A stretch of DNA of 64,000 nt, taken from positions 124,001 to 188,000 of IMG/VR virus record IMGVR_UViG_3300035698_035310, one strand, 5' to 3'. The notes under the pieces are model-generated. The model had not been told where the DNA came from. It ran no database searches and saw only the letters and a list, made by a program, of their open reading frames with translations. Within the stretch, counting starts at the first letter, position 1, and every line of letters begins with the position of its first letter. A program made the position numbers and the translations under genes. This document shows, piece by piece, positions 2,541-61,863 of the stretch.

Positions 2541-3542
2541 TTAAAAAATATTAATATTTTTTAAAAACATATGAAATGAACTGTATTCGATATTAAAATA
2601 TTGTTGAATTTCATTTGGGGTTTTTTTATCTATATGATACATATGGCATAATATATTTATGCTGTTAAGTATATTGCGTTCAGTGTTATATGGATCACCC
2701 AACACAAAATTAAACATTTTGGATAATACTTTTGCTGATATTTTGTTGGGATTATTCCAACCTAGTGCTGGTTTCAATTTGTTATTATATACACGACCTG
2801 TTATAGATGAATATTTAATCGGAGTATATGGATGTTTAATCGCAGAACGTCGATTGATATGTTTTATATTGGCTGTATCGATTTTTTGTTCAAATAAATA
2901 ATTGTCAAATGGTTCATTGTGTTTAGTTGCCCATTTTAAAATATTATCAAATAATATTTCTTTGGATATTGCATTATCTGAACCTTTTAATGAATTAACC
3001 GAATTCATTAAAAATTGACAATTAGCAGGATGTGAAATAATATCAGGATGCATTTTTAAATCAAATCCGCTTTTTACTGAAAACATATGATCATGGCAGA
3101 CGCCATCTTTTTTTGTTAAGGGATTATAAAATCCATGCTTAACATATAAATCATAACCAAGAAATGTATCATAATATTTTTCAATAAATCTAAATGAACA
3201 TAATTGTTTATATCGTTTATATTGCACGCCGTGCGTTGTAGGCAAACCATTACTTTTTATTAATGACGCACGTTGCCGCTGTCTTGATTCGGTTGTGCGT
3301 ATATTATTAGAATGTATACCACCACATTTGGACGAACAAAAAATATTACCATTTTGATGCTTTTCGTATGATATAATAGATTTACATATGGAACATAATT
3401 TTGGATTTTCTTCATATACATTTTTAACTTTAGCACGACTGTATTTTTGTGAACAGGTTTGTGTACAAAATTTGCTATGACGCTTATCTTTTGGTGTAAA
3501 CTCTATTTTACACTGATGGCATATATATTTGTTTGTTGACAT
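2541..3542 (-). CDS. HNH-type homing endonuclease-like protein
   Basis: N-terminal CxxC/CxxxC repeats plus DHMFSV...HPANCQ...NSLK motif; free-standing, convergent on the tRNAs. Confidence 0.65.
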   Translation of the reverse strand: MSTNKYICHQCKIEFTPKDKRHSKFCTQTCSQKYSRAKVKNVYEENPKLCSICKSIISYEKHQNGNIFCSSKCGGIHSNNIRTTESRQRQRASLIKSNGLPTTHGVQYKRYKQLCSFRFIEKYYDTFLGYDLYVKHGFYNPLTKKDGVCHDHMFSVKSGFDLKMHPDIISHPANCQFLMNSVNSLKGSDNAISKEILFDNILKWATKHNEPFDNYLFEQKIDTANIKHINRRSAIKHPYTPIKYSSITGRVYNNKLKPALGWNNPNKISAKVLSKMFNFVLGDPYNTERNILNSINILCHMYHIDKKTPNEIQQYFNIEYSSFHMFLKNINIF

Positions 3543-3549
3543 ATTGGTA

Positions 3550-3646
3550 TCCTTTCGATTATAAATACGATGGCGGTTGGATTTTCCTTTCGGTGTCCTT
3601 GTGATATATATTTCCAGTATGTATCACGCCGCTATTACTATTTATC
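3550..3646. promoter_or_regulatory. convergent TATAAATA-type boxes flanking a structured element; SD-complementary repeat
   Basis: TATAAATA (+) 3560-3567; GATAAATA (-) 3646-3639; TCCTTTCG at 3550-3557 (SD of the HNH gene on -) repeated at 3585-3592. Confidence 0.6.
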
Positions 3647-3704
3647 TTGACAAACCTTATTTTCTCCTATAATATGAACACATCATTATAAAGGGAGAAA
3701 TAAT

Positions 3705-3884
3705 ATGTTTGATATTTTAGAAGATGCATTTGATATTTTAACTGCGCCAATTCGCAACACGGTTGATGTACTTGAAGGATTGTCGGAAGGCGAACTTCGA
3801 ACGCATGCTATTGCGCAACTTGGTTCGAGTGCGGTTGCGGGTTTGGAAGCATATGAAATCATTGAGCTATTGTTGGAAGATTAA
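3705..3884 (+). CDS. small hypothetical protein, 59 aa (not in ORF track)
   Basis: MFDILEDAFDILTAPIRN...ELLLED; GGGAG SD; TAATG overlap with the next gene. Confidence 0.75.
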   Translation: MFDILEDAFDILTAPIRNTVDVLEGLSEGELRTHAIAQLGSSAVAGLEAYEIIELLLED

Positions 3885-4120
3885 TGGCAAAAGTTATTTT
3901 ACGCGAACCAGTAGATGTAATACGTTGGTGGCCGGGGGGCGACGAAATTGAAAATGTTACCGAGGTTCGTCATACTCAACTAGGATTTATTGGTCATTTG
4001 CAACAAGATGGAAATACGCTCATGGTAAAACCTGGTGATTATGTATTGTCATTTCTTGGAAAGCAAATAATAATGAATGAAGAAATTTTCAAAATCAACT
4101 TTAAAGGTCACAAAGAATGA
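3884..4120 (+). CDS. hypothetical protein
   Basis: 78-aa ORF coupled on both sides (TAATG, ATGA). Confidence 0.7.
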   Translation: MAKVILREPVDVIRWWPGGDEIENVTEVRHTQLGFIGHLQQDGNTLMVKPGDYVLSFLGKQIIMNEEIFKINFKGHKE

Positions 4121-4509
4121 ATCAAGATATATGGGATCGATTAGATAAAGTTAGCACATTCAGGCTTACTTCATATTTGAAAAATGAATATCCACAAGTG
4201 GTTGGTGTCATTCTTTTCAATTTGTCTAGGAAAACGGTTGCTGGTGTAATGGATGAATTACCAGAAAATTTTGCTATGGAAGTTGTAATGCGTATGTTGC
4301 GCACGGATGATGTTCGCAAGGAAGTTATTGATATCATTGAAGACACATTACAGGATGAATTTTTTAATAATGTAGTCACTTATGACAATAAAGAAAAATT
4401 TATAGGTGATATGTTCGATGTTATGGTTCATTCTGATCACATGGTAGAACAGCTTGAAGAACGCAATCGTGAAATGGCTGAAAAAGTTAAGGGGTATATG
4501 GACACATGA
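4117..4509 (+). CDS. fliG: flagellar switch protein FliG, middle domain only
   Basis: YLKNEYPQ (EHPQ motif), LPENFAMEVVMRMLR and LEERNREMAEKVK match alphaproteobacterial FliG-M plus helix MC; N- and C-domains absent. Confidence 0.85.
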   Translation: MNQDIWDRLDKVSTFRLTSYLKNEYPQVVGVILFNLSRKTVAGVMDELPENFAMEVVMRMLRTDDVRKEVIDIIEDTLQDEFFNNVVTYDNKEKFIGDMFDVMVHSDHMVEQLEERNREMAEKVKGYMDT

Positions 4510-5024
4510 TTAATCAATCTATGATAGAAGCATTAATACCGACAATGAAGAACACTGCATTTAAAGGTATTTGCACTAATCCAGATATTCAACTTGATAA
4601 TTTGGCACTTATGACATTTGGTGAATATGTTGATACAATACCGCTTCCTGCAATGTGTTGTAAGTTTGATTTTGCTGGATATGCTGCATTTATCATATTT
4701 GATAGTTCATTGATATATTCTATGGTTGATGTTTTATCTGGTGGTCGTCGTGGCACCGCTGCAATGCGAATTGAAGGCAGGGGATATACAACAATTGAAA
4801 AGCGCATTATTAAAGAATTAGTAATGGAATCAATTGTGAATGAGTTATTGTATGAACTCAATATATTATCAAAAGATATATATATGGAAATAGAACATAT
4901 AAGTCTCAGTCCAGATAATATGAGAAAGCAATTATCTGAAAATGAAATGGTTCAAATTGCACGAATGAGAGTAGACTTGGATGACCGTGGTGGTCGTTTC
5001 GAATTATGCGTTGAAGAACATTAA
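4506..5024 (+). CDS. fliM: flagellar switch protein FliM, middle (CheC-like) domain only
   Basis: FGEYVDTIPLP, DSSLIYSMVDVLSGGRRG, RIEGRGYTTIE and RVDLDDRGG match alphaproteobacterial FliM-M; CheY-binding N-terminus and SPOA domain absent. Confidence 0.85.
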   Translation: MINQSMIEALIPTMKNTAFKGICTNPDIQLDNLALMTFGEYVDTIPLPAMCCKFDFAGYAAFIIFDSSLIYSMVDVLSGGRRGTAAMRIEGRGYTTIEKRIIKELVMESIVNELLYELNILSKDIYMEIEHISLSPDNMRKQLSENEMVQIARMRVDLDDRGGRFELCVEEH

Positions 5025-5821: not shown

Positions 5822-6037
5822 ATGATGAAACACAATCTTCGGCATATAAATGATGCCCCTATAGATAAACCATTTATTGCATATAAAACGGATGGCGATA
5901 CTGTTATAGCAAAATATGGAGATAGCAATCAACCAGATAATTTACCTTGGGTTAGCGAAAGTCGTGGTTTTGGTAATGAAGATTTTATTGCTTGGCAACC
6001 GCTGCCTGATCTATACATGAATCGTGGTGATTTGTAA
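5822..6037 (+). CDS. hypothetical protein
   Basis: 71-aa ORF, AAGGAG SD, terminal AWQPLP motif. Confidence 0.65.
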   Translation: MMKHNLRHINDAPIDKPFIAYKTDGDTVIAKYGDSNQPDNLPWVSESRGFGNEDFIAWQPLPDLYMNRGDL

Positions 6038-6474
6038 TGCCACATGACAAAATTATAAAAGCGCGTGAAGAAATGCGCAAATCATATGGTTTTTATGGAA
6101 AACTATTAGATGTGTTTGATATACACGCAACTGGCAATGATGAACAACCTGTTTCGACCATTGCTATATATGATAATATTATAGAGTATAATCCTGATTT
6201 TATAAATGATTTAGAACATGATCAAATTATATTTGCTTTGGCGCATGTTATATTGCTTATGATATTCAAATGCAATGAACGTCGTGGTGATCGTGATCGG
6301 TTAATATGGAACAGTGCGTGCAATTATTCAATTAACAATATACTTGTTAAACAAAACATAGGTCGCAAGACTAATGAATGCTTGCTATCTGATGATTATG
6401 ATGATATGATAATTGAACAAATTTACGAAGATTTAATATCAAAAGGATTCAATTATGGGCAAGGTAAAAAATAA
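6037..6474 (+). CDS. DUF2201 N-terminal (putative metallopeptidase) domain-like protein with degenerate HExxH
   Basis: YNPDF, FALAHVILL, RRGDRDRLIWNSACNYSINNIL. Confidence 0.6.
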   Translation: MPHDKIIKAREEMRKSYGFYGKLLDVFDIHATGNDEQPVSTIAIYDNIIEYNPDFINDLEHDQIIFALAHVILLMIFKCNERRGDRDRLIWNSACNYSINNILVKQNIGRKTNECLLSDDYDDMIIEQIYEDLISKGFNYGQGKK

Positions 6475-6502
6475 TAATTGAATATATTATAGAAAGGACT
6501 TT

Positions 6503-6946
6503 ATGATGGGTAAATCCATTTCACAAAACCGCAAAGTGCGCCATAACTATACCATTGATGATGAGTATGAAGCGGGTATTGTATTACAGGGCAACGAAGT
6601 AAAAAGTTTGGCTGTTGGACAGTGCAGCATTGCTGAATCGTATGTTACCATTGAAGGCAATGAAGCATTTTTGGTTAATGCGCATATTGATCCATATGAT
6701 TTAGGTTCTAAGTTTGTGGCACAAGAGCCACGACGTCGGCGCAAATTATTGTTGCATAAACGCGAGATAAAGAATTTGCTTGTCAAATCGCAACAAGGGG
6801 GTTATACTATAGTTGCATTATCGATGTACTTCAATGACACGGGCAAGGTAAAACTTAAAATTGCCACTGCCAGAGGAAAGAAGAACTACGATAAGCGTGC
6901 CACGGAGAAGCAACGTGATTGGGATCGTGATAAGCGCAATTTATAG
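6503..6946 (+). CDS. smpB: SsrA-binding protein SmpB
   Basis: NRKVRHNY, EAGIVLQGNEVKSL, RRRKLLLHKREI, ARGKKNYDKR. Confidence 0.95.
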   Translation: MMGKSISQNRKVRHNYTIDDEYEAGIVLQGNEVKSLAVGQCSIAESYVTIEGNEAFLVNAHIDPYDLGSKFVAQEPRRRRKLLLHKREIKNLLVKSQQGGYTIVALSMYFNDTGKVKLKIATARGKKNYDKRATEKQRDWDRDKRNL

Positions 6947-34436: not shown

Positions 34437-34712
34437 ATGAAAATTAACTGCGTGGAAAAAATGGATCATAAACCGGCATATGAAACTGTTGATGTTTGTA
34501 ATGACGGAATACAGGTACATATAATAAAACAGTGCCCGGCAAAATATACATGTTTGTTTCCTACTAGAAATGAGGCAATTATTTTTATTCGTGAATTGAA
34601 AAAAATACCAAGTATTGATTATCAACAGTATCATTTGGGTGATAGAAATCTATTGGAAGTTAATATTCATTCGAAAGACGCATTATTTTTGTTTTCATTG
34701 AGATGGTTATAA
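34437..34712 (+). CDS. FKLRW-family protein, tandem paralog 1
   Basis: ends SKDALFLFSLRWL. Confidence 0.7.
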   Translation: MKINCVEKMDHKPAYETVDVCNDGIQVHIIKQCPAKYTCLFPTRNEAIIFIRELKKIPSIDYQQYHLGDRNLLEVNIHSKDALFLFSLRWL

Positions 34713-34713
34713 T

Positions 34714-34992
34714 ATGTCAATACATATAGAATGCGTAAATCGAATGATTGAACGACCTGTATTCGTAGACATCGAAACTGTTGGTGGTAGAGGTGTTATA
34801 ATACAAGACCAGCATGATTCGATACCAGCAGAATTTAATATATTTTCAGATACGAATAAAGAGTTGCATAAAATAATGAATGAAATATCACGTATGCATG
34901 GTGTAACAATTACAGATACTCGTGATCTCTGGGCAACTATTAATGTTAATACAAAAGAATCATTGCTTTTGTTTTCATTGAGGTGGCGGTAA
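34714..34992 (+). CDS. FKLRW-family protein, tandem paralog 2
   Basis: ends TKESLLLFSLRWR. Confidence 0.7.
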   Translation: MSIHIECVNRMIERPVFVDIETVGGRGVIIQDQHDSIPAEFNIFSDTNKELHKIMNEISRMHGVTITDTRDLWATINVNTKESLLLFSLRWR

Positions 34993-34993
34993 T

Positions 34994-35275
34994 ATGACGG
35001 AATTGTATATACATCAAACTGTGCGGATGCACCATAAGCCATCATTTGAACAATACAACACCTTGGGTGGTGGTGGTTACATCAATTATACGAATGAGTT
35101 TGTACCAGCAGAATTTATTTGCAACGCAGATGATTCTGCAACATTACTTGCGTTTATAGACGAGTTGAGAATATTACCCGGTCTTCAAGTTGACAGAGAG
35201 CATCATCAATCTGAGATTACCGTTAAAATTCATTCAAAAGAAACATTATTAATATTTTGGTTGAGGTGGATGTGA
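34994..35275 (+). CDS. FKLRW-family protein, tandem paralog 3
   Basis: ends SKETLLIFWLRWM. Confidence 0.7.
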   Translation: MTELYIHQTVRMHHKPSFEQYNTLGGGGYINYTNEFVPAEFICNADDSATLLAFIDELRILPGLQVDREHHQSEITVKIHSKETLLIFWLRWM

Positions 35276-35433
35276 TGTTATATAGATTTAAAGATATGGA
35301 CGTTAAGCCGGATGAAAACATAAAAGAATGGTGCAATGAAAATTTAACAGACGGTGAAGTAGAATTTGGTGCTACTACCATTTACATACAATCGGAGATA
35401 GATGCAATGGCGTTTGAATTAAGATGGATTTAA
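35275..35433 (+). CDS. minimal 52-aa FKLRW-family protein (not in ORF track)
   Basis: MLYRFKD...IKEWCNEN...SEIDAMAFELRWI; TGATG overlap. Confidence 0.75.
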   Translation: MLYRFKDMDVKPDENIKEWCNENLTDGEVEFGATTIYIQSEIDAMAFELRWI

Positions 35434-35435
35434 CA

Positions 35436-36158
35436 TTATTTATGTTTACAATTGTCATTATGCCACCTATTTAATGCTCCATAATTTCGAGTTGATAAAT
35501 TGCAATGAGGGCATGTTTTATATGGCTGTGATAATTTTGCTTTAGACATTTTATTTTTAGCCGATATTGTTTTAGGTTTTCCTTTTGCCGCATTGCTCAT
35601 TTTTTGTTTAGTTGTTTCGGAGTGTGTTCTTCCGTATTTACCTGTTAATGCCGCGCTAATACATTTTTTAGTTTCTTTGCTGAGTTTTTTACCTATATTC
35701 GCCAAAAATAATTTTTGTTTGGTTTCTGCTGTATGTTTTTTGCCTACCCCCGCTAAAGATAATTTTTGTTTGGTTTCTTCTGATAATTTCTTACCTTTAT
35801 GAGCATTGCTTATTTTTAATTTAGTTTTTTCAGTATGTTTGTATCCACTTTTACAATAAAATTTATTGTCGCCGTTGTGTTGATTTAGATAATTTGTATT
35901 ATTGGCTGCGTCAATTTTTGATAAAACTTTGCTTTCCCATAATCTGGCTTTTTTTGGATTATTTGGAAATTCTTTACGTATTTCATATATAAAATTTTCT
36001 AATCCATATTTTTGTATAAGGCTTTCGATAATTGCCGATGAAGTAAAATATGTAGACCACAAATCAGATGGGTGGCAGTTTTTAGCATATCTTACCCCAT
36101 AATAATGTTGGCCCGTTTCTAAAAAAGTTATGCGATATGTATAAGGTATATGATTCAT
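35436..36158 (-). CDS. GIY-YIG-type homing endonuclease with NUMOD3-like repeats
   Basis: YTYRIT...HYYGVR, YFTSS; repeated (H/L)(T/S)EETKQK(I/L)S...GK units; terminal CPHC. Confidence 0.85.
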   Translation of the reverse strand: MNHIPYTYRITFLETGQHYYGVRYAKNCHPSDLWSTYFTSSAIIESLIQKYGLENFIYEIRKEFPNNPKKARLWESKVLSKIDAANNTNYLNQHNGDNKFYCKSGYKHTEKTKLKISNAHKGKKLSEETKQKLSLAGVGKKHTAETKQKLFLANIGKKLSKETKKCISAALTGKYGRTHSETTKQKMSNAAKGKPKTISAKNKMSKAKLSQPYKTCPHCNLSTRNYGALNRWHNDNCKHK

Positions 36159-36165
36159 CTTGATT

Positions 36166-36272
36166 TTCCTTGGCTTTTATGATAGTATAAATAATAAAGT
36201 AGTGGGACAGCCCAACTTCCTTGGCGGGTTTTAGTTGTTGAAACCAACTAATTACCACTATATCTATTTATT
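36166..36272. promoter_or_regulatory. convergent TATAAATA-type boxes flanking a structured element; SD-complementary repeat
   Basis: TATAAATA (+) 36186-36193; AATAAATA (-) 36272-36265; TTCCTTGGC at 36166-36174 (SD of GIY-YIG gene on -) repeated at 36217-36225; stem TAGTGG/CCACTA. Confidence 0.6.
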
Positions 36273-36288: not shown

Positions 36289-37506
36289 ATGAATGACCAT
36301 CGCGAGATTGCTACAGCTTTAGACTTATTTCATTTTGAGGAGCATTCACCAGGAATGGTATATTGGCATCCTGAAGGGTTTAAATTATATCGAACCATAG
36401 AAGAATATATGCGAAGCATGCATGAAAAATATGGATATAAAGAAATTAGAACACCAATAATGGTCAATAAATCTTTATGGAAATTGTCTGGTCATTGGGA
36501 TAAATTTCAAGACAATATTTTTATTGCTGGTGAAATAGGTGAAGTAATAAGCGATGAGTTAATTTATACTGACGGGCAATATGTAATGTCTCCGATGAAT
36601 TGTCCAAATCATATACAAGTGTACCAAAAGGGAACAAAGTCTTACAAGATGCTACCTGATCGTTTATTTGAATTTGGTGTGGTGCATCGCAATGAACCAT
36701 CTGGATCATTGGCTGGCATTATGAGATTGCGAAGTTTTACACAAGATGACTCGCATATACACTGTACTGAAGATCAAATTTTGAGTGAAACAACCAATTT
36801 TATCAATATGCTTCAAGAAGTTTATTCTAAGTTTGGGTTCAATGACGTCGCTGTAAAACTTGCCACTCGATGTGAAGAACGCATTGGCGACGATGCCAGT
36901 TGGGATAAAGCCGAGAAAGCATTAGAAGATGCTTGTATACATCTTGGATTGGAATACACAATTAATCCCGGTGAATCAGCATTCTATGGCCCAAAACTTG
37001 AGTTCACGCTACAAGATAGCCTTGGTCGTGATTGGCAATGTGGAACCATCCAGATTGATTTTAACATGTGCGAACGATTGGGTGCTACATACATTGACGA
37101 AAATGGTGATAAGAAACATCCGGTATTGATTCACCATGCTGTATTGGGAAGTTTGGAACGCTGGGTTGGTGTATTGCTTGAGAACAGCAATGGTGAACTA
37201 CCGTTGTGGCTTGCCCCTACACAAGTGGTTGTTGCCAGTATTACCAGTGATGTTAATGACTATGCTGAAGAGAAAATGGTTACACTTAGTGGTATCGGAT
37301 ATCGAGTTGAGTTGGATGACCGAAATGAAAAAATCGGTAAGAAAATCAAAGACGCACAGAAACGACGTATTCCATATATGCTTATTGTGGGTAAAAAGGA
37401 AAAAGAGAATCAAATGGTCAACGTTCGCAAATTGAACGGCGACCAAGATGATATGGAGTTGATAGATTTTATAGGATCATTCGTCAAATCTACAAATGAA
37501 AGGTGA
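36289..37506 (+). CDS. thrS: threonine--tRNA ligase lacking the N-terminal TGS/editing domains
   Basis: starts at DHREI...DLFHF...PGMVYWHPEG; MNCPNH, HRNEPSG, FTQDDSH, AFYGPKL, WQCGTIQ; GGAG SD before ATG 36289. Confidence 0.93.
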   Translation: MNDHREIATALDLFHFEEHSPGMVYWHPEGFKLYRTIEEYMRSMHEKYGYKEIRTPIMVNKSLWKLSGHWDKFQDNIFIAGEIGEVISDELIYTDGQYVMSPMNCPNHIQVYQKGTKSYKMLPDRLFEFGVVHRNEPSGSLAGIMRLRSFTQDDSHIHCTEDQILSETTNFINMLQEVYSKFGFNDVAVKLATRCEERIGDDASWDKAEKALEDACIHLGLEYTINPGESAFYGPKLEFTLQDSLGRDWQCGTIQIDFNMCERLGATYIDENGDKKHPVLIHHAVLGSLERWVGVLLENSNGELPLWLAPTQVVVASITSDVNDYAEEKMVTLSGIGYRVELDDRNEKIGKKIKDAQKRRIPYMLIVGKKEKENQMVNVRKLNGDQDDMELIDFIGSFVKSTNER

Positions 37507-54438: not shown

Positions 54439-54471
54439 GTATAAGCACGTTTTTCGAGAGCGTGTTCGCCG

Positions 54472-54509
54472 AAAAGTGCCCCATAGCTTAGATTGTGGGG
54501 CACTTTTTT
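54472..54509 (+). terminator. intrinsic terminator
   Basis: AAAAGTGCCCCA / TGGGGCACTTTTTT inverted repeat with T tail. Confidence 0.85.
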
Positions 54510-54510
54510 C

Positions 54511-54538
54511 TTGACAATTTATCACCATATGATACAAT
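54511..54538 (+). promoter_or_regulatory. sigma70-type promoter, extended -10
   Basis: TTGACA-N16-TACAAT with TGn. Confidence 0.55.
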
Positions 54539-54568
54539 AAACACTTAATCATTAAAGGAGAATACACA

Positions 54569-56087: not shown

Positions 56088-56142
56088 AATAAATATAGAC
56101 ATAATCGAAAGTTATATAGTAGTTGGATACCATATAACTTTC
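56088..56142 (+). promoter_or_regulatory. AATAAATA box plus perfect 11-bp hairpin upstream of Seg-like endonuclease
   Basis: GAAAGTTATAT (56107-56117) / ATATAACTTTC (56132-56142). Confidence 0.45.
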
Positions 56143-56172
56143 TAAACAATACGCAACGATAGGAGTGGCGTC

Positions 56173-57036
56173 ATGTCTAAAGATATTTATAACACTAAAT
56201 TTATATTCGGTCAAGATTATCATGGATTTATTTATGAATGGGTTGATAATTCTAATGGTAAAAAATATATAGGATCGCATAAAGGGTCGATTGATGATGG
56301 ATATATAGGTTCAGGAACATATTTTATTTCTGCTTATAAAAAAAGAACCCATTGTTTTAGTCGAATAATATTAGAATATATATCAAAAAATATAGATGAT
56401 ATATATACCATTGAACAAAAATGGTTAAATATGGTAAATAATATATCATCAAATGAATCATATTATAATCTATCAAATAACGCAACAGGGGGAAATTCTG
56501 AAAAAAACTACGCACGAAAAAGAAATGGTGAATTTACTGAAAAAGAAATGATTGCACATGAGCGAAAAGCCAATGGTATATTTACACCAAAAGAACTAGA
56601 GTTTCATAAACGTCGAAAAAATAGATTTTTAAATGGTGATTATACAAAAGCAGAAAAACAGTCTTATATACGATCTAAAGAGCGAAAATCAGCAGGGAAT
56701 TTTACAGATGCAGAAATTAAATATTTTAGTGAACAAAAAAAGAGAAAATCAAATGGTATATTTACACCAAAAGAAATAGAGTTTCATAATAATCAAAGTA
56801 ATCGGAAGTCGGCAGGAAATTTTACAGATGCCGAGTTAAAATGTTTAAATCTCGATAAAATAAGAAAATCAAAAGGCTTATTTACCGATGCGGAATTAAA
56901 AAATTTTAAGAACATGAAGGGAAAACGATGGCTTACCAAAGATTTTATCAATAAATTAATATCAAAAAATTTAATACAACAATATATTGATGCCGGTTGG
57001 ATATTTGGAAAATATAAAAAAATCAATCCCAACTAA
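56173..57036 (+). CDS. GIY-YIG homing endonuclease (Seg-like) with C-terminal repeats
   Basis: GFIYEW...KKYIGSH...DGYIGSG, FSRIILE, EQKWL, YYNL; seven G-x-(F/Y)-T-x-x-E repeats. Confidence 0.88.
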   Translation: MSKDIYNTKFIFGQDYHGFIYEWVDNSNGKKYIGSHKGSIDDGYIGSGTYFISAYKKRTHCFSRIILEYISKNIDDIYTIEQKWLNMVNNISSNESYYNLSNNATGGNSEKNYARKRNGEFTEKEMIAHERKANGIFTPKELEFHKRRKNRFLNGDYTKAEKQSYIRSKERKSAGNFTDAEIKYFSEQKKRKSNGIFTPKEIEFHNNQSNRKSAGNFTDAELKCLNLDKIRKSKGLFTDAELKNFKNMKGKRWLTKDFINKLISKNLIQQYIDAGWIFGKYKKINPN

Positions 57037-60000
57037 ATTTATCAATCCCATCAAAATCTATTTCACTTCCGTCTGATAATGTTAAACTTCCTGACATTTC
57101 TTCCGATGTTGGAAGATTGTTTGGATTGCTATCTGCCGTAAATGTTTCACCATCAACTGTTAATGCCCACCCTTGTGTGCCTTCCATATTTAGTGTATCT
57201 GTTCCCTCGCCGCCCGATATCCAATCACCGCCACCAAATCCGTCGCCGCCTTCGCCACCGAAGATAAACATATCATCGCCACCATTGCCCATTACGTGGT
57301 CATTAGCATCTGTTGCATCGTCGCTATCAAATGTATCATCTGCTTTTTTTCCTTTGTCTTTTCCATCTATTTCATTATATTCAGAACCGCCTTCACCACC
57401 CTCGCCGCCTTCACCACCATCTTTATCTTTTTTATCTTTACCTTTTCCACCTTCACCGCCTTCACCGCCATGTCCATGCCCATGTGATCCACCTTCACCG
57501 CCTTCACCACCTTCATTGCCTTCAACGTCGATAATGGTCGTAGCGGTTCCGGTTCCACCTTCACTGTCCACTATATTATATGTGAAACTATCTTCACCAG
57601 AAAATCCTTCATATGGCGTATAAGTCCATGTTCCATTTTCATTATCTATTATAATTCCATTTTCAGGATCGTCAATGCTGGTAATAGTTATAGTGTCGCC
57701 ATCTAAATCTGTATCATTAGATAGCAAATCTTCAGAAGAAAACGTTATAGAATTATCATCATCAATATCAAATTCATCATCAACACCAAGAGGTGTGGTA
57801 TTTCCTGTTTCATCTACTAACCACGTGGATGATTGTGTGTCAACAGATACAACAGATGCCGTAACAGGTGTATCTCGTTCTATTTCTACTGTTCCATCTG
57901 AATACGTTAATGTGTTAACCGAAGTGTTTGATGTTTCTGTTGTTATGTCTGTAGTAGTTGTTTCTGTAAACACTCGATTAATCACAGTTGTTTTTGTTCC
58001 ATCGTCATTTTCAACAATCGATTCATTATTTACAAATGTTATGGTTGATTCTGGTTCACTCGTTATAATATTTTCTTCTGTTTCTATGGTTGTAACAATT
58101 TCAGGATCAACATATTCGGTTTCGACATTAGTTAATGTTTCCGTTCGTGTATCTGAGGTTATTTCGCTATCAATGTTGGGTGTTCCATTTTCGACTTCAA
58201 CCGTTCCGTCTGAATATGTTATTGTGCTGACGGGAGTTATCGTTGTGGTGGTTGTGGTTTCAGTCGCATATTCATTTGTGGTTGTTGTAGTAGTATCTAT
58301 TTGTTCGCGGTTATTATCCGTATCGATAGTTGTATCACTTTCTATTATGTCGTTAGTTGTTTCCCATGTTTCATCGCCCACAACAGCATCGGTAGTGGTA
58401 ACGTATTCAGTGGTTATTGTTGGTTCTTCATATGTAGTAACAATTTCGTCCGTGGTATCAACTCTTGATTCAGTTGTTGTATCTGCTGTAATAACAGGAT
58501 CGTCCTGTTCAATTTCAACAGTTCCATCTGAATACGTAATGGTTGTTATTTGTGTGGTTGTGGTTGTGGTTGTTGTATCAGTTTCATAATTGTTTGTGGT
58601 TGTGGTCGTTGTATCTAATTGCTCACGGTTATTATCCAAATCATTTGAACGTGACACATCATCTTCGGTTGATGTTGAAATTAAGGTTTCATCGCCTACG
58701 ACAACGTTGGTTGTTACTTCTTCTGACGTAACAATTTGTGGCTCTTCGTAAACAACGTTGGTATCAGTTAACACTTCTTCTCTTGTATCGGTTGTAGGTT
58801 CAACTGTTTCAACTGGCGTTCCGTATTCTATTTCAACTGTTCCATCTGAATAAGTGATAGTGATAACGGGTGTTGTTGTTACGGTTGTAGTTGTTATTGT
58901 ATCATATGTATTTGTGGTTGTGTTGGTAGTATCTAATTGTTCGCGGTTATTATCCGTATCAATAGTGCGAACAGTTTCTGATTCTGTTTCGGTGTTAGAT
59001 AATATTTCATCGCTAACAACTACTGTTGTTTCATGCTCATAGGTTTCAACAATTTCAGGGTCTTCATTCGTAGTTATTGTTTCTGAAGTCACTTCATCGC
59101 GTGTTGATGTATCAGTGGTAGTTTCTATCGCTGGTGTGCCGTATTCTGTTTCTACAGTGCCGTCGCTGTAAGTTATGGTATGAACAGGCGTAGATGTGGT
59201 TGTGGTGGTTGTATCAACCGCATAGGTATCTGTGGTCGTTGTTGTCGTATCTACCCGTTCGTTATTATATTCTGTTTCAATAGTTGTCACTACATTTTCT
59301 TCTGATGCTGTTCCAGTTTGATATTCATCGCCAATTGTATCCACTGATTGCACATCAGTCGTGATTGTAATAACAGGCTCTTCTGTACTTGTGGATATAT
59401 CAATTTCGCGGATTTCATCACGTGTTGATGTATCAATTTGAACTGTGTTATCGGTTGGTTCTGCGCGTTCGATTTCAATAGTTCCATCGCTATATGTAAT
59501 GGTTTGAACTTCGATTGTTGTTGTTGTTTCCAATATGGGCGTTTCAAATGTATCTGTATATTCACGCGTCACAGTAACTATTTCTTGATTATTATCTAAA
59601 TCGTTAACACGCGATGATGAATCATAGAACTCTGTATTAGTTAAAGTTTCTTTGCCGTTGTGAAGGTCGGTTGAAATTTCATATGTGACAACAATGGTTG
59701 GTTCTTCATATGTGGTAACTATTTCATCGGCAATATCGGTTCTTGTTTCTGTATTTGTATTTTTTGTAATAGACGGATCGCCCTGTTCAATTTCAACTGT
59801 TCCATCTGAATAAGTGATAGTTATTACTGGTGTTATTGTGGTGGTAGTCGTTGTATCAATGGCATAGTTATTCGTGGTAGTAGTTGTTGTATCTACTTGT
59901 TCACGATTGTTATCAGTGTCTATTATACGGTCAATTTCTGTCCCGGTTTCTGATCCAATTAGAATTTCATTACCAATTTCATTTGATATTTCAGTTGTAT

Positions 60001-61015
60001 ATTCGGTTGTGATAACAGGTAGTTCTATATCAGTAGCAAATATTGCATCTCTAATCGCAACTGTTGTATCAACTGTGGTGTTGGATTCTATCACAGGGTC
60101 ACCCACAATCGTTTCAATAGTGCCATCACTATATGTAATAGTTTCGGTTGGCGTTGTTGTTTCTGTGACCGTTGAATCAATCGTTGTGGTATCTGTATAA
60201 TTACGAGTCGTTGTGACTATTTCTTGATTGTTTGCTAGATCATTTTCTTTTGAAACTACATCTTCGTATGTTGTTACAACACATGGATCATCGATAACTG
60301 TATTTGAAATAATTTCGTATGAAATTTCTCTAGACATCTCGGTCACTGGTTCTACAGCATCATCGCCACCACCACCATTGGTGCCATTATCAATAGGAAA
60401 CCCAAGATCGGGGTTAAGCACAGAATTAAGAATTGCGTCAAAGTCAATTTCAGGCATAACGTCTGTATTCGCGAGTGGATCATTTGGCACCTCGTCAACG
60501 CTTTGATTTACATCATTTATTGTAGAAAATCCGCTATCTTCCGCACGCTGCTGTTCTTCTTCGGCTACTTTTTTAAATACATCATCGCCATGCATTTCGC
60601 GTGTATCAAATATCAAACTGGCACGATCTATAGCATAATCTATTTGTTCTGATGTAAACCCATTCTCAATTAATTCATTCCTTGTGTAACCATTGACGTC
60701 AATAGATACATTATTTATATCATTAAACGCTACTATATTATTTTCAGTATTGACATATATACCCAACGATGTCTGTATTACTGTGCCTTCTGTGATTAGT
60801 GCACTTAACAATTCCGCTTCTGTTAGTTGTGAACCCATGTGAATATTTTGTGAACCAGAACCAAACACATCTTCTTTATCGCCACCATCACCTTCGTGAA
60901 GTTGTTGTACCGATGCATCAAGGTCAATTTCATCTTCGGTCTGTAAGACAGTTAAATCATCAAGTATTGAGTGATTTTCGCGAACATCGTCGTCGTCATT
61001 TGTTATTTCAGCCAT
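57023..61015 (-). CDS. large acidic Thr-rich repeat protein with cadherin-like/Big domain and RTX-like Ca-binding tail (adhesin-like)
   Basis: eight ~106-aa T(I/L)TYSDGT repeats; LLSNDTDLDGD...GTWTYTP...DSFTY; GEGGEGG tracts; GNGGDD and GGEGTDTL nonapeptides. Confidence 0.8.
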   Translation of the reverse strand: MAEITNDDDDVRENHSILDDLTVLQTEDEIDLDASVQQLHEGDGGDKEDVFGSGSQNIHMGSQLTEAELLSALITEGTVIQTSLGIYVNTENNIVAFNDINNVSIDVNGYTRNELIENGFTSEQIDYAIDRASLIFDTREMHGDDVFKKVAEEEQQRAEDSGFSTINDVNQSVDEVPNDPLANTDVMPEIDFDAILNSVLNPDLGFPIDNGTNGGGGDDAVEPVTEMSREISYEIISNTVIDDPCVVTTYEDVVSKENDLANNQEIVTTTRNYTDTTTIDSTVTETTTPTETITYSDGTIETIVGDPVIESNTTVDTTVAIRDAIFATDIELPVITTEYTTEISNEIGNEILIGSETGTEIDRIIDTDNNREQVDTTTTTTNNYAIDTTTTTTITPVITITYSDGTVEIEQGDPSITKNTNTETRTDIADEIVTTYEEPTIVVTYEISTDLHNGKETLTNTEFYDSSSRVNDLDNNQEIVTVTREYTDTFETPILETTTTIEVQTITYSDGTIEIERAEPTDNTVQIDTSTRDEIREIDISTSTEEPVITITTDVQSVDTIGDEYQTGTASEENVVTTIETEYNNERVDTTTTTTDTYAVDTTTTTTSTPVHTITYSDGTVETEYGTPAIETTTDTSTRDEVTSETITTNEDPEIVETYEHETTVVVSDEILSNTETESETVRTIDTDNNREQLDTTNTTTNTYDTITTTTVTTTPVITITYSDGTVEIEYGTPVETVEPTTDTREEVLTDTNVVYEEPQIVTSEEVTTNVVVGDETLISTSTEDDVSRSNDLDNNREQLDTTTTTTNNYETDTTTTTTTTQITTITYSDGTVEIEQDDPVITADTTTESRVDTTDEIVTTYEEPTITTEYVTTTDAVVGDETWETTNDIIESDTTIDTDNNREQIDTTTTTTNEYATETTTTTTITPVSTITYSDGTVEVENGTPNIDSEITSDTRTETLTNVETEYVDPEIVTTIETEENIITSEPESTITFVNNESIVENDDGTKTTVINRVFTETTTTDITTETSNTSVNTLTYSDGTVEIERDTPVTASVVSVDTQSSTWLVDETGNTTPLGVDDEFDIDDDNSITFSSEDLLSNDTDLDGDTITITSIDDPENGIIIDNENGTWTYTPYEGFSGEDSFTYNIVDSEGGTGTATTIIDVEGNEGGEGGEGGSHGHGHGGEGGEGGKGKDKKDKDGGEGGEGGEGGSEYNEIDGKDKGKKADDTFDSDDATDANDHVMGNGGDDMFIFGGEGGDGFGGGDWISGGEGTDTLNMEGTQGWALTVDGETFTADSNPNNLPTSEEMSGSLTLSDGSEIDFDGIDKFSWD
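57890..60140 (-). repeat. degenerate tandem repeat, ~318-bp period, 8 copies
   Basis: SDGT-coding cores near 60123, 59802, 59484, 59160, 58842, 58524, 58205, 57893; 31-nt identity at 59791-59821 and 58831-58861. Confidence 0.8.
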
Positions 61016-61102: not shown

Positions 61103-61342
61103 TTAATCCAATGACCTTATTATAACATCACCGCCAGAAAATTGAACCAGTTCTTCCATTGTTTCTGGCCCGATTATTGCGTCAGGCATCGTATTTTTTA
61201 TATACTGTAACACTGCTTCGGTTTCTGTCGAACTCAATAAATCAAATGTCAATTCAACCATATCGTCATATTTTTTCACGTTGACCGGGAGACCCATGAG
61301 ATGTATAAGTTCTGTTGATATAGGACCAATCATTTTGTTCAT
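61103..61342 (-). CDS. hypothetical protein
   Basis: 79-aa ORF, ATGA overlap. Confidence 0.6.
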   Translation of the reverse strand: MNKMIGPISTELIHLMGLPVNVKKYDDMVELTFDLLSSTETEAVLQYIKNTMPDAIIGPETMEELVQFSGGDVIIRSLD

Positions 61343-61575
61343 TGTTGTTCCTGATTTATAAAAACGCTGCGATGATAATTAGGATATAAACTATGCAAAT
61401 TTTCTTGTGTTAATGGAAAATTTTTACACGTTTTTTTTATAACAGTTAATAATTCTTTTCGATTAATAGACACTCTTACATCGGGTAATTTTTGTCCATG
61501 CCAACTTTTTCGATATATAAACACGATATCGCTATTGGTGCCGATTAAAACTATTTCTTTAATTTCTTCATTCAT
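61339..61575 (-). CDS. hypothetical protein
   Basis: 78-aa ORF. Confidence 0.55.
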   Translation of the reverse strand: MNEEIKEIVLIGTNSDIVFIYRKSWHGQKLPDVRVSINRKELLTVIKKTCKNFPLTQENLHSLYPNYHRSVFINQEQQ

Positions 61576-61611
61576 TATATACTCACTTACATTTATGTCA
61601 ACTATAAATAT

Positions 61612-61863
61612 TTATACCACCGTAATCCATACGTCATTAATATAATCAGCATAACATTCTATGATTTCAGCTTGTGTTGCAGTTGCAGTGTCGATATCAA
61701 GTTTTATTTGTATTTTTCCGTTTGATAATATATATATTAATTCATTCATTTCTTTAAGTGTAAGACCAAGCATACCATCACTCATGATAGATTTCACGAT
61801 ACTTGATGTTCCATCCACATATTGATCTAGTTCATCGATATAAATTTCTATCATTATAACCAC
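61612..61863 (-). CDS. hypothetical protein
   Basis: 83-aa ORF; start could be ATG 61854. Confidence 0.55.
   Translation of the reverse strand: MVIMIEIYIDELDQYVDGTSSIVKSIMSDGMLGLTLKEMNELIYILSNGKIQIKLDIDTATATQAEIIECYADYINDVWITVV

What the first reader, a model, noticed from the sequence alone, without database searches (positions are those of the whole stretch)
3543..3646. 87-bp convergent-promoter cassette with an internal anti-SD copy controlling the HNH gene
Seen: upstream of the minus-strand HNH gene, a sense GATAAATA box (3646-3639) and an antisense TATAAATA box (3560-3567) face each other, spanning 87 bp. Between them is a multi-stem element (GCGG...CCGC closing, GTGATA/TATCAC arm, CC-GAAA-GG arm). 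The gene's SD region (CGAAAGGA, 3557-3550) is repeated inside the element (3592-3585). The antisense transcript would therefore carry a perfect 8-nt anti-SD, partly in a loop. Known: TATAAATA is the T4-type late promoter; T4 endonuclease genes are translationally throttled; P1/P7 c4 antisense RNA works through duplicated target boxes. Inference: antisense-RNA control of a toxic mobile nuclease.
Basis: partly seen in the sequence, partly recalled or inferred. Interest (0 to 1): 0.68.

Follow-up and report, generated by a model that had tools for sequence, protein, structure and literature searches.

The report
Recurring control cassette before homing-endonuclease genes
The 87-bp element is real and is one of three look-alike, Y-shaped, promoter-flanked cassettes that sit at the start of all three recognisable homing-endonuclease genes in this huge-phage window; relatives precede such selfish nuclease genes in many other phages, so it is most likely a device that limits when and how much nuclease is made.

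Summary
Singly they are weak: TATAAATA occurs 8 times against 11.4 expected, and the 8-mer repeat has p of about 0.03. Together they recur. Inward-facing ATAAATA pairs 50-110 nt apart occur three times in 64 kb (0.48 expected), each at the 5' end of one of the three homing-endonuclease (HE) genes. All three fold into the same Y shape, and the arm nearest the HE start carries that gene's Shine-Dalgarno (SD) sequence.

The antisense box at 3560 is the -10 of a sigma-70-like promoter. Its -35, TTGACA (3536-3541), overlaps the HE start codon. The + strand folds far better than the minus strand (-29.4 against -16.4 kcal/mol; six G·U pairs against none). Its first arm can pair with 10+5 nt of the HE ribosome site.

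The second copy belongs to a family of at least 35 distinct HE leaders that matches nothing in Rfam. In that family the SD copy co-varies with the true SD, but the structure is specific to the sense strand.

Verdict: a real HE control cassette. Antisense control is plausible but unproven. I rate it a new variant of phage T4-style HE regulation.

The parts
2541..3542 (-). HNH-like homing-endonuclease ORF (333 aa). It has two N-terminal CxxC...FCxxxC zinc ribbons and a CHDH...N...N motif. Its stop codon abuts tRNA-Arg (2462-2539).
   Evidence: The homologues P0002-P0005 are 43-47% identical and two carry PF18780, the homing-endonuclease-associated repeat. 47 of 64 HE-type queries hit this ORF. 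Its GAP32, Vibrio-phage and 735-kb-phage homologues also sit in tRNA clusters.
3550..3557 (-). SD region of the nuclease gene: CGAAAGGA, with AGGA 7 nt before the ATG.
3536..3541 (+). TTGACA, a -35-like hexamer for the + strand promoter. It overlaps the nuclease start codon (ATGTCAA on the minus strand).
   Evidence: L009 has the same ATGTCAA/TTGACA overlap.
3560..3567 (+). TATAAATA. It is the -10 of the + strand sigma-70-like promoter (18-nt spacer) and also matches the T4 late-type box. Bases 3561-3567 form the 5' strand of helix P1. The predicted + strand start is about 3572-3573.
3569..3636 (+). Y-shaped domain. P2 pairs 3569-3577 with 3628-3636. Arm 1 is 3579-3598 and arm 2 is 3601-3627. 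There are six G·U pairs on the + strand.
   Evidence: -22.2 kcal/mol, z=-4.5 for 3573-3646.
3585..3592 (+). Internal copy of the SD-region 8-mer at the apex of arm 1. It reads UCCUUUCG on the + strand RNA and CGAAAGGA, with a C-GAAA-G tetraloop, on the minus strand RNA.
3639..3646 (-). GATAAATA, a late-type promoter-like box in the nuclease sense direction. Bases 3639-3645 form the 3' strand of P1. The predicted sense start is about 3633.
   Evidence: The equivalent box is present in 29 of 35 E2-family leaders with a fixed 3-nt spacing.
3646..3675 (+). CTTGACA-N17-TAATAT (or N15-TATAAT), a sigma-70-like promoter of the downstream + strand gene 3705-3884.
   Evidence: The consensus CTTGACA-N16/17-TAtaaT recurs at many + strand gene boundaries.
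36186..36272 (-). E2, the second cassette, upstream of the GIY-YIG-type endonuclease ORF 35436-36158 (-). It is 87 nt long, and the 9-mer TTCCTTGGC at 36166-36174 is repeated at 36217-36225. E2 is a member of the conserved leader family.
   Evidence: 60 bits, E=9e-13 on the minus strand.
56088..56191 (+). E3, the third cassette, in mirror orientation at the start of the GIY-YIG endonuclease ORF 56173-57036 (+). Its SD and ATG lie inside the element. The antisense promoter is TTGACC (56214-56209), 17-nt spacer, TATAAATA (56191-56184).

Best explanation
The 87-bp element (E1) is the 5' control cassette of the HNH-like homing-endonuclease (HE) gene, which is inserted upside-down next to a tRNA pair. 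It is one of a recurrent class.

Shown by the sequence: two promoter-like sites face each other across about 70 nt that fold into a three-way (Y) structure. On the nuclease strand there is a late-type ATAAATA box about 97 nt before the ATG. On the opposite strand there is a sigma-70-like promoter, TTGACA-N18-TATAAATA, whose -35 overlaps the nuclease start codon.

Inferred:
1. Host-type RNA polymerase fires the + strand promoter from early in infection.
2. This makes a compact Y-shaped RNA of about 70-75 nt, or a longer RNA running on towards gene 3705.
3. That RNA is fully complementary to the nuclease mRNA leader.
4. Through the apex of arm 1 it is also complementary to the SD and spacer of the nuclease TIR, which lies outside the overlap.
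5. Convergent transcription plus this pairing keep the nuclease silent or low.
6. The nuclease's own late-type promoter allows limited expression late in infection.

The two ATAAATA boxes double as the closing helix P1 of the Y.
For: 1. Recurrence. Three of three HE genes in the window carry the architecture, against 0.48 box pairs expected. L009, L013 and L148 from other phages do too.
2. Antisense promoter. TTGAC-N17-20-TATAAAT occurs twice in the window (0.18 expected), at E1 and E3, both antisense to the HE gene. L009 has TTGACA-N18-TATAAATA over its ATGTCAA start. This matches the phage's own CTTGACA-N17-TATAAT promoter class.
3. Strand asymmetry. For E1 the + strand gives -29.4 kcal/mol (z=-5.2) and the minus strand -16.4 (z=-2.2). 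G·U pairs, antisense versus sense, are 6/0 in E1, 2/0 in E3, 3/1 in L009, 5/2 in L148 and 7/1 in L151. The predicted RNA 3573-3646 gives -22.2 kcal/mol, z=-4.5. The predicted sense leader gives z=-1.2.
4. Pairing. The E1 + strand RNA against the nuclease TIR gives -18.4 kcal/mol (10+5 bp) against -9.9±2.7 for shuffled TIRs, p=0.008. In E3 the antisense RNA covers the true SD and AUG.
5. Late-type box. ATAAATA is the predicted late promoter of Rak2/GAP32-like jumbo phages, which encode a gp55-like factor (PMC5259590). The T at -13 is poorly conserved in T4 relatives (PMC1524935). The GAP32 homologue of this ORF has TATAAATA 19 nt before its ATG.
Against: - There are no transcript data, so both promoters are only consensus matches. 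The -10 TATAAA lacks the conserved final T and the spacer is 18 nt.
- TATAAATA is not enriched in the window.
- The inverted boxes are explained by helix P1 alone.
- In the E2 family the structure is clearly sense-strand (67 G·U against 6 A·C in hp2). Only 9 of 35 members keep a full antisense ATAAATA.
- By its architecture, and by its ORF's relatives carrying family leaders, E1 may be a decayed sense leader.
- Cross-element matches are as long as own matches: the E1 interior matches the HE2 TIR over 10 nt. The SD copy may therefore reflect shared ancestry of TIR-like segments.
- The wobble asymmetry could partly reflect strand-biased mutation.
- E2's flanking-strand sigma-70 match is weak (8 of 12).
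Confidence: 0.48

Rival explanations
1. Cis-only sense leader, on the phage T4 model. The element is just the nuclease mRNA's own regulatory leader. The ATAAATA box is its late promoter. In longer transcripts the box RNA pairs with UAUUUAU next to the SD (P1), closing the Y and hindering ribosome access; late transcripts lack that strand. The internal SD copy is a decoy that occupies, or competes for, the pyrimidine-rich 3' strand of the second arm. The layout is c4-like (b1-b'-b2), all on one strand. The antisense TATAAATA is merely the P1 complement.
For: - The E2 family has the sense box in 29 of 35 members, fixed 3 nt before GUGG, and a TATTTA complement in 25 of 35.
- Family structure: 92% of cells paired against 82% when shuffled; covariation 0.324 against 0.156.
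- hp2 wobble pairs are specific to the sense strand, 67 against 6.
- The SD copy co-varies with the true SD (own 7.06 against cross 4.88, p<1e-4).
- The SD is predicted to be more open in late-start than in long transcripts in 19 members against 6.
- In E3 the AUG lies in P2, whose 5' strand precedes the predicted late start.
- The T4 precedent is I-TevI, segB and mobE (PMC2988022).
- E1 has the same arm order, and a C-GAAA-G tetraloop on the sense strand.
Against: - E1's sense strand folds poorly (z=-1.2 to -2.2), and all six wobble sites favour the other strand.
- E1's SD lies 3 nt outside P1, so it is not sequestered.
- The nuclease is inverted relative to its neighbours, so long sense read-through transcripts, on which the T4 logic depends, are unlikely.
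- No conserved upstream anti-SD was found (p=0.076).
- E1 is not a detectable family member (13 bits, E=4).
- This rival does not explain the -35 TTGACA at E1, E3 and L009.
Confidence: 0.28
2. Flanking-strand element. The + strand promoter and Y-shaped RNA serve the surrounding transcription unit. They would act as a replacement promoter with a structured 5' leader, a processing site or an insulator for the downstream genes that the inverted nuclease cassette cut off from their upstream promoters. Any effect on the nuclease is incidental.
For: - All three HE genes are inverted relative to their neighbours.
- In E2 the element runs straight into the SD and ATG of a thrS-like gene (36289-37506) with no other promoter between. 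In E3 it runs into the 135-aa gene 56049-55642.
- T4 precedents exist for HE cassettes that carry promoters for neighbouring genes (PMC2988022).
- The well-folded strand is the flanking strand in E1 and E3.
Against: - E1 is followed at once by a separate, better promoter for gene 3705, so no replacement promoter is needed there.
- In L009, L151 and L153 the well-folded strand is antisense to both the HE gene and its upstream neighbour.
- This rival does not explain the SD copy or its co-variation with the true SD.
- No terminator-like site is scored at E1 or E2.
Confidence: 0.14
3. DNA-level element or chance. The inverted 7-mers and imperfect palindromes could be a recombination or insertion hot-spot, a cruciform, an invertible segment, an operator for the nuclease, or simply AT-rich coincidence.
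For: - The boxes are short and AT-rich.
- Taken singly, the features are within chance.
- I-TevI binds an operator that overlaps its own late promoter (PMC2988022).
- The same cassette type precedes unrelated HE families, as expected of a shuffled module.
Against: - G·U-dependent strand asymmetry and compensatory changes point to RNA.
- The recurrence statistics argue against chance.
- Four assemblies show one identical orientation.
- The repeated words always contain the SD core.
Confidence: 0.07

Closest known systems
Phage T4-type control of homing-endonuclease genes (I-TevI, I-TevII/III, segB, Aeh1 mobE): a late promoter embedded in a hairpin that sequesters the ribosome-binding site (PMC2988022)
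   Same: A late-type (T)ATAAATA box lies just upstream of an HE gene. The box region forms one strand of a helix whose other strand lies next to or over the TIR. In E3 the AUG is inside the helix, and the predicted late start removes the inhibitory strand. The purpose is the same: to throttle a selfish nuclease.
   Different: Here a branched Y domain of about 60-75 nt carrying a second SD copy sits between the box and its complement. In E1 and E2 the SD is outside the helix, as in seg43(25) of Aeromonas phage 25. The HE genes are inverted relative to their neighbours. A sigma-70-like promoter also fires the other way.
P1/P7 c4 antisense RNA and its duplicated target boxes (recalled from memory; Rfam C4 family)
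   Same: A short structured RNA presents a loop complementary to a ribosome-binding site, and a second copy of the target word lies nearby.
   Different: No match to any Rfam model. As I recall it, c4 is made from the same strand and transcript as its target, whereas the E1 RNA proposed here is cis-antisense. The c4-like same-strand layout fits the E2 family better than E1.
Overlapping 5' leaders from face-to-face promoters (excludon-type or convergent-promoter antisense control; T4 segD in antisense orientation, PMC2988022)
   Same: An inverted gene faces a host-type promoter. The 5' regions are complementary, so transcriptional interference and duplex formation are expected.
   Different: Here the overlap is a conserved, branched structure with a dedicated anti-SD apex, and it recurs at every HE gene in the window.
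E2-family HE leader motif defined here (nATAAATA-N3-GUGGUAAUU-hairpin-AAAAC-hairpin with SD copy-GCUGUCCCAC-N4-8-UAUUUA-SD)
   Same: E1 has the same order of parts: box, P2, long arm, short arm with SD copy, P2', UAUUUAU, SD. It has the same orientation relative to the HE gene. Its ORF belongs to a protein family whose members commonly carry this leader (L013, L242, L255 and others).
   Different: E1 lacks the conserved junction words and scores only 13 bits (E=4) with the family model. Its stable strand is the opposite one.

Membership tests
T4-type late promoter (gp55-dependent) | TATAAATA (core ATAAATA) at -13 to -6 | tested here: met
   3560-3567 (+) is a perfect match. 3646-3639 (-) matches 7 of 8, GATAAATA. 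The core is present on both sides in E1, E2 and E3.
T4-type late promoter (gp55-dependent) | The motif is over-represented and lies upstream of late genes in the same genome | tested here: inconclusive
   8 sites against 11.4 expected in the window. About 4-5 of the 8 lie in regulatory-looking positions. The window holds mostly non-structural genes, and the rest of the 359-570 kb genome was not examined.
T4-type late promoter (gp55-dependent) | The phage encodes a gp55-like late sigma factor (with gp33 and gp45) | not tested
   Only 64 kb of the genome was in hand. Related Rak2-like jumbo phages encode a gp55-like factor and use ATAAATA (PMC5259590).
Sigma-70-type promoter (the + strand, antisense to the nuclease) | TTGACA, 17±1 nt spacer, TATAAT | tested here: met
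   TTGACA 3536-3541 (6 of 6), 18-nt spacer, TATAAA (5 of 6, lacking the final T). The pattern occurs twice in the window against 0.18 expected, at E1 and E3. The tool's stricter scan did not list it because of the missing T.
T4 HE translational hairpin (I-TevI, segB, mobE) | The SD or AUG lies inside the helix formed with sequence upstream of the late start | tested here: not met
   In E1 the SD (3557-3550) lies 3 nt 3' of P1 and is unpaired in the minimum-free-energy fold. The feature is met in E3, where the AUG lies in P2.
c4-type antisense RNA (Rfam) | Match to the covariance model | tested here: not met
   No Rfam family reaches E<=10 at 3543-3646. None matches E2, E3 or 12 family loci.
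Intrinsic terminator | GC-rich simple hairpin followed by a U run | tested here: not met
   The scan finds none at 3543-3704 or at E2. The Y is branched and its tail, UAUUACUAUUUAUCUU, is interrupted.
   E1 scores 13.2 bits, E=4.1 (3582-3648, minus strand). E2 scores 60 bits, E=9e-13.
HNH (His-Me finger) homing endonuclease (the ORF) | HNH catalytic motif and family-model match | tested here: inconclusive
   No Pfam hit. PHROG 'HNH endonuclease' families match only residues 4-115 (E=1e-6 and 3.5e-5). A CHDH...N...N motif is seen by eye. Homologues carry PF18780. The genomic behaviour, free-standing in tRNA clusters of several phages, fits a homing endonuclease.

The most novel reading that the evidence does not exclude
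[quoted passage not shown] It consists of a late-type box, a three-way junction with near-invariant junction nucleotides, and a decoy copy of the gene's own SD that co-varies with the true SD. The conserved junction could sense a protein or a small molecule, acting as a riboswitch-like or c4-like cis switch. In this phage the module would have been converted at E1 and E3 into a sigma-70-driven trans/cis-antisense RNA. The E1 RNA also pairs with the TIR of the second nuclease gene (-21.7 kcal/mol), which would make a small regulatory network for selfish nucleases.
Probability: 0.3. Interest if true: 0.8.

Novelty: new variant of a known kind. Interest (0 to 1): 0.62.

Why it matters
Homing endonucleases are selfish nucleases that must be kept from harming the phage that carries them. 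The only well-studied control logic comes from T4: a late promoter plus a hairpin that hides the ribosome site.

This window shows a richer, recurrent solution in a huge phage. Face-to-face promoters flank a conserved branched RNA that carries a copy of the gene's own ribosome-binding word. The search also uncovered a family of at least 35 distinct leaders, matching no Rfam model, upstream of unrelated endonuclease genes in many metagenomic phages.

If the antisense or decoy-SD mechanism holds, it would be:
- a portable regulatory module that travels with, or is recruited by, mobile nuclease genes;
- a new candidate class of cis-regulatory RNA;
- a practical marker for finding free-standing endonuclease cassettes and late promoters in uncultivated jumbo phages.

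Tried and rejected
- **Nucleotide searches.** Near and distant searches of the region against phage records found nothing.
- **Relatives of the phage.** Only identical copies exist in four assemblies, so E1 shows no variation. One relative at 44% identity lacks synteny. Covariation for E1 itself was therefore impossible.
- **HNH homologue upstream regions.** L011 and L015 lack the element and instead show sigma-70-like promoters. GAP32 and the 735-kb phage have only a simple sense box or a small hairpin.
- **Box-pair pattern scan.** TATAAATA-N56-72-CTATNNCTATTTAT in viral contigs gave mostly chance hits and only E1 and E2 in this phage.
- **E1-only covariance model (R1).** It finds E2 weakly (E=0.058), plus a probably spurious hit at 57679-57758.
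- **Shared E2/L013 words.** About half of the 144 stretches found were chance and were filtered out.
- **Conserved anti-SD upstream of the box.** A fully T4-like sequestering helix (P0) was not significant (p=0.076).
- **Terminator reading.** No terminator-like site was scored.
- **Leader-peptide or alternative-start reading of the internal SD copy.** There is no suitably spaced start codon (read).
- **Rfam and literature.** No Rfam family matches. A literature search on the conserved words found nothing relevant.
- **L151/L153.** They carry a similar box-flanked, antisense-biased element about 90 nt upstream of a GIY-YIG-like ORF, but in a different context. They are treated only as suggestive.

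Full report
**1. What the window is**

The window is part of IMG/VR contig IMGVR_UViG_3300035698_035310 (359 kb). The same phage lies on a 570-kb ENA contig. G+C is about 35% and nearly all genes are on the + strand. The gene content is typical of huge phages:
- tRNAs, FliG- and FliM-like fragments and an SmpB-like gene;
- a ClpB-like ATPase and an NAD-dependent ligase;
- a thrS-like gene.

The phage's recognisable promoters are sigma-70-like, CTTGACA-N16/17-TAtaaT, on the + strand at gene boundaries. No close relative exists in the collections searched. The intergenic region is identical in four assemblies.

**2. The observation**

Taken singly, the features are not remarkable:
- TATAAATA occurs 8 times against 11.4 expected.
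- The 8-mer TCCTTTCG occurs twice against 1.16 expected.
- A repeat of that length between the TIR (the translation initiation region, SD to start codon) and the interior has p of about 0.03.

The secondary structure is significant, but on the + strand only:

| Segment | Strand | Energy (kcal/mol) | z | Shuffles as good |
|---|---|---|---|---|
| 3560-3646 | + | -29.4 | -4.4 to -5.2 | 0 of 200-300 |
| 3560-3646 | - | -16.4 | -2.2 | |
| 3530-3650 | - | -17.3 | -1.0 | |

The fold is a three-way junction:
- P2 pairs 3569-3577 with 3628-3636.
- Arm 1 (3579-3598) is short and holds the 8-mer copy.
- Arm 2 (3601-3627) is long.

Six G·U pairs make the fold specific to the + strand. In a 100-nt scan of both strands, this site ranks roughly tenth to twelfth among the best-folding sites in the window.

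**3. The pattern recurs at every homing-endonuclease gene in the window**

Inward-facing ATAAATA...TATTTAT pairs with a 50-110 nt gap occur exactly three times in 64 kb (Markov expectation 0.48).

| Element | Coordinates | Homing-endonuclease (HE) gene |
|---|---|---|
| E1 | 3560-3646 | HNH-like ORF 2541-3542 (-) |
| E2 | 36186-36272 | ORF 35436-36158 (-), PHROG 'homing endonuclease', GIY-YIG type N-terminus |
| E3 | 56088-56191 | ORF 56173-57036 (+), same PHROG, GFIYEW...KYIGS |

The three ORFs are not detectably similar to one another. No fourth HE-like ORF was found with 64 HE-type queries.

Each HE gene is inverted relative to its neighbours. All three elements fold into the same Y: P1, P2, a short arm nearest the HE start, then a long arm. 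Their interiors, however, are unrelated in sequence (43% identity without gaps).

The short arm always carries the SD word of its own HE gene:
- In E1 it is the 8-mer.
- In E2 it is the 9-mer TTCCTTGGC (36166-36174 and 36217-36225).
- In E3 the true SD and AUG themselves lie inside the element.

**4. The promoters**

The pattern TTGAC-N17-20-TATAAAT occurs twice in the window (0.18 expected). Both sites are antisense to an HE gene:
- At E1: TTGACA 3536-3541, 18-nt spacer.
- At E3: TTGACC 56214-56209, 17-nt spacer, on the minus strand.

At E1 the -35 is the complement of the start codon plus the next codon (ATGTCAA). L009, from another phage, has the same arrangement. Its predicted start, about 3572-3573, falls at the base of P2. 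At E2 the equivalent match is weak, 8 of 12.

The sense-direction box (GATAAATA at E1, AATAAATA at E2 and E3) has no -35. It resembles the late-promoter core ATAAATA, for which there is outside support:
- ATAAATA is the late promoter predicted in Rak2/GAP32-like jumbo phages, which encode a gp55-like factor (PMC5259590).
- The first T is poorly conserved in T4 relatives (PMC1524935).
- The GAP32 homologue of the HNH-like ORF has TATAAATA 19 nt before its ATG, and that gene too is inverted within a tRNA cluster.

Whether this phage has late-type transcription was not tested.

**5. Relatives elsewhere**

Among 199 kb of loci that hold homologues of these nucleases, only four independent box pairs exist. 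All four lie upstream of HE homologues: L013, L009, L148 and L151/L153.

L013 precedes a 43%-identical homologue of the HNH-like ORF, yet it is clearly homologous to E2, which precedes a GIY-YIG gene. Scanning with two words shared by E2 and L013 recovered, after chance hits were removed, 56 distinct cores. Of the leaders with an upstream box, 35 distinct ones were aligned from box to ATG as alignment A5.

Their consensus is:
1. nATAAATA, then 3 nt;
2. GUGGUAAUU;
3. a hairpin of variable sequence;
4. AAAAC(CC);
5. a hairpin containing a copy of the SD region;
6. GCUGUCCCAC, then 4-8 nt;
7. UAUUUA, the SD and the ATG.

The structure is well supported. 92% of cells pair against 82% in shuffles, the covariation score is 0.324 against 0.156 (0 of 500 shuffles reach either), and the signal collapses when the pairing partners are slid.

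The downstream ORFs are HE-type but of several families: HNH/HNH_3, NUMOD3, SegE GIY-YIG, DUF559, HNH_repeat and zinc-ribbon forms. Many are homologues of the window's HNH-like ORF.

The internal SD copy co-varies with the true SD. Examples are TCGGTGAA, CCAGTCAGAG, TATCAGGAGT, TACGGAGA and GGAGCTAT, each present twice in its own leader. The longest shared word within a leader averages 7.06 nt, against 4.88 nt between different leaders (permutation p<1e-4).

No Rfam model matches any of these elements. A literature search on the conserved words found nothing relevant.

**6. Which strand works?**

For the E2 family the answer is the sense strand, the mRNA leader. The second hairpin has 67 G·U pairs on that strand and only 6 A·C mismatches. 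The sense box is conserved in 29 of 35 members at a fixed 3-nt spacing. A full antisense ATAAATA is present in only 9 of 35.

In that family the SD copy forms the 5' strand of a helix with a pyrimidine-rich 3' strand. That 3' strand could equally well pair with the true SD. This is a same-strand decoy / anti-SD / SD layout.

A T4-like reading also fits loosely. In predicted folds the SD is more open in late-start than in long transcripts in 19 members against 6. A conserved upstream anti-SD is not supported (p=0.076).

For E1, E3, L009, L148 and L151/L153 the opposite strand is favoured:

| Element | G·U pairs, antisense / sense |
|---|---|
| E1 | 6 / 0 |
| E3 | 2 / 0 |
| L009 | 3 / 1 |
| L148 | 5 / 2 |
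| L151 | 7 / 1 |

E1 and E3 are also not detectable members of the E2 family (13-14 bits, E about 3-4). They share its architecture and its orientation relative to the HE gene.

**7. Pairing test**

- The predicted + strand RNA 3573-3646 folds at -22.2 kcal/mol, z=-4.5.
- Its arm 1 pairs with the nuclease TIR over 10 contiguous bp plus 5 more, reaching the start codon: -18.4 kcal/mol against -9.9±2.7 for shuffled TIRs (p=0.008).
- It pairs even better with the TIR of the second nuclease gene, -21.7 kcal/mol.

That last result means either trans-regulation or shared descent of TIR-like segments. Cross-element word matches are as long as own matches, which weakens the argument that the pairing is specific to E1.

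**8. Conclusion**

E1 is a genuine, recurrent control cassette of a homing-endonuclease gene. It is neither a chance pattern nor a terminator.

A promoter facing the nuclease gene is well supported by sequence, but it is sigma-70-like. The structured strand at E1 is the antisense one, and it carries an extended anti-TIR segment.

Against it:
- The symmetric boxes are also the closing helix.
- The late-promoter status is only an analogy.
- The closest sequence family works in cis on the sense strand.
- Nothing is known about transcripts.

I put antisense plus convergent-promoter control at about 0.5. A purely cis T4-like or decoy leader is at about 0.3. A flanking-gene promoter and leader is at about 0.14. 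The remainder goes to DNA-level or chance explanations.

The finding is a new variant of T4-style endonuclease regulation. The conserved leader family that matches nothing in Rfam is the most interesting by-product.

Noticed in passing
L198, L202, L207, L211, L220, L226, L257, L266, L275-L277, L283, L291, L309, L323, L324, L327: A second group of 18 sequences has the same core (GTGGTAATT-hairpin-AAAAC-hairpin-GCTGTCCCAC) but no ATAAATA box and no SD or ATG after it. Several follow a TTGACC-N17-TATAAT-like site, and a divergent gene start (GGAGG...ATG on the other strand) lies next to them. Their reverse strand tends to fold better, in 13 of 18. The orientation and function are unexplained.
   Followed up: partly
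window 2541-2539 junction; L195 (GAP32), L196 (Vibrio phage 2.275.O), L197 (LR756501): The HNH-like ORF ends exactly at the 3' end of tRNA-Arg. Its homologues in GAP32, a Vibrio jumbo phage and a 735-kb uncultured phage also sit inside tRNA clusters; in GAP32 the gene overlaps tRNA-Met and is inverted. This looks like a nuclease lineage that targets tRNA clusters.
   Followed up: partly
window 2574-2632 (+) and 3093-3116 (+): Two terminator-like hairpins with T runs lie on the + strand inside the nuclease ORF, antisense to it. They could stop read-through from the tRNA genes before it crosses the nuclease gene.
   Followed up: no
window 4117-5024, 6037-6946, 36289-37506: The phage encodes short FliG-middle-domain and FliM-like proteins (130 and 172 aa), DUF2201_N and SmpB-like proteins, and a thrS-like gene (about 47% identical to phage and bacterial threonyl-tRNA synthetases).
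   Followed up: partly
window 34440-35433 (+): A run of small tandem paralogous + strand ORFs each ends with a repeated motif (TTGTTTTCATTGAG[AG]TGG...) just before the next start codon.
   Followed up: no
window 57023-61015 (-), 58001-60000: A 1330-aa minus-strand ORF has no PHROG hit, and the region has a very strong AT skew (-0.32). The E1-only covariance model gave a probably spurious hit inside it at 57679-57758 (E=0.0018).
   Followed up: no
window 54470-54540 (+) and other gene boundaries (19275, 27490, 32975, 42775, 45826, 46205, 51882): Canonical terminator-then-promoter modules: a hairpin with a T run is followed directly by CTTGACA-N16/17-TAtaaT. This defines the phage's sigma-70-like promoter class.
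   Followed up: partly
L238 1893-1999 (-); L238 and L255 overall: A skipping-rope RNA (Rfam RF02924, 48 bits) and very large tRNA clusters lie beside E2-family leaders in other huge-phage contigs.
   Followed up: no
Start codons of many HE ORFs (window 3542; L009, L215, L249, L255, L336, L244, L272, L087, L106): Many of these nuclease ORFs start with ATGTCAA. That places a TTGACA -35 hexamer on the opposite strand exactly over the start codon, a possible general way of coupling a divergent or antisense promoter to the gene start.
   Followed up: partly
window 61603-61616: A palindromic TATAAATATTTATA, two overlapping boxes on opposite strands, lies 34 nt upstream of a minus-strand ORF (61339-61575).
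   Followed up: no
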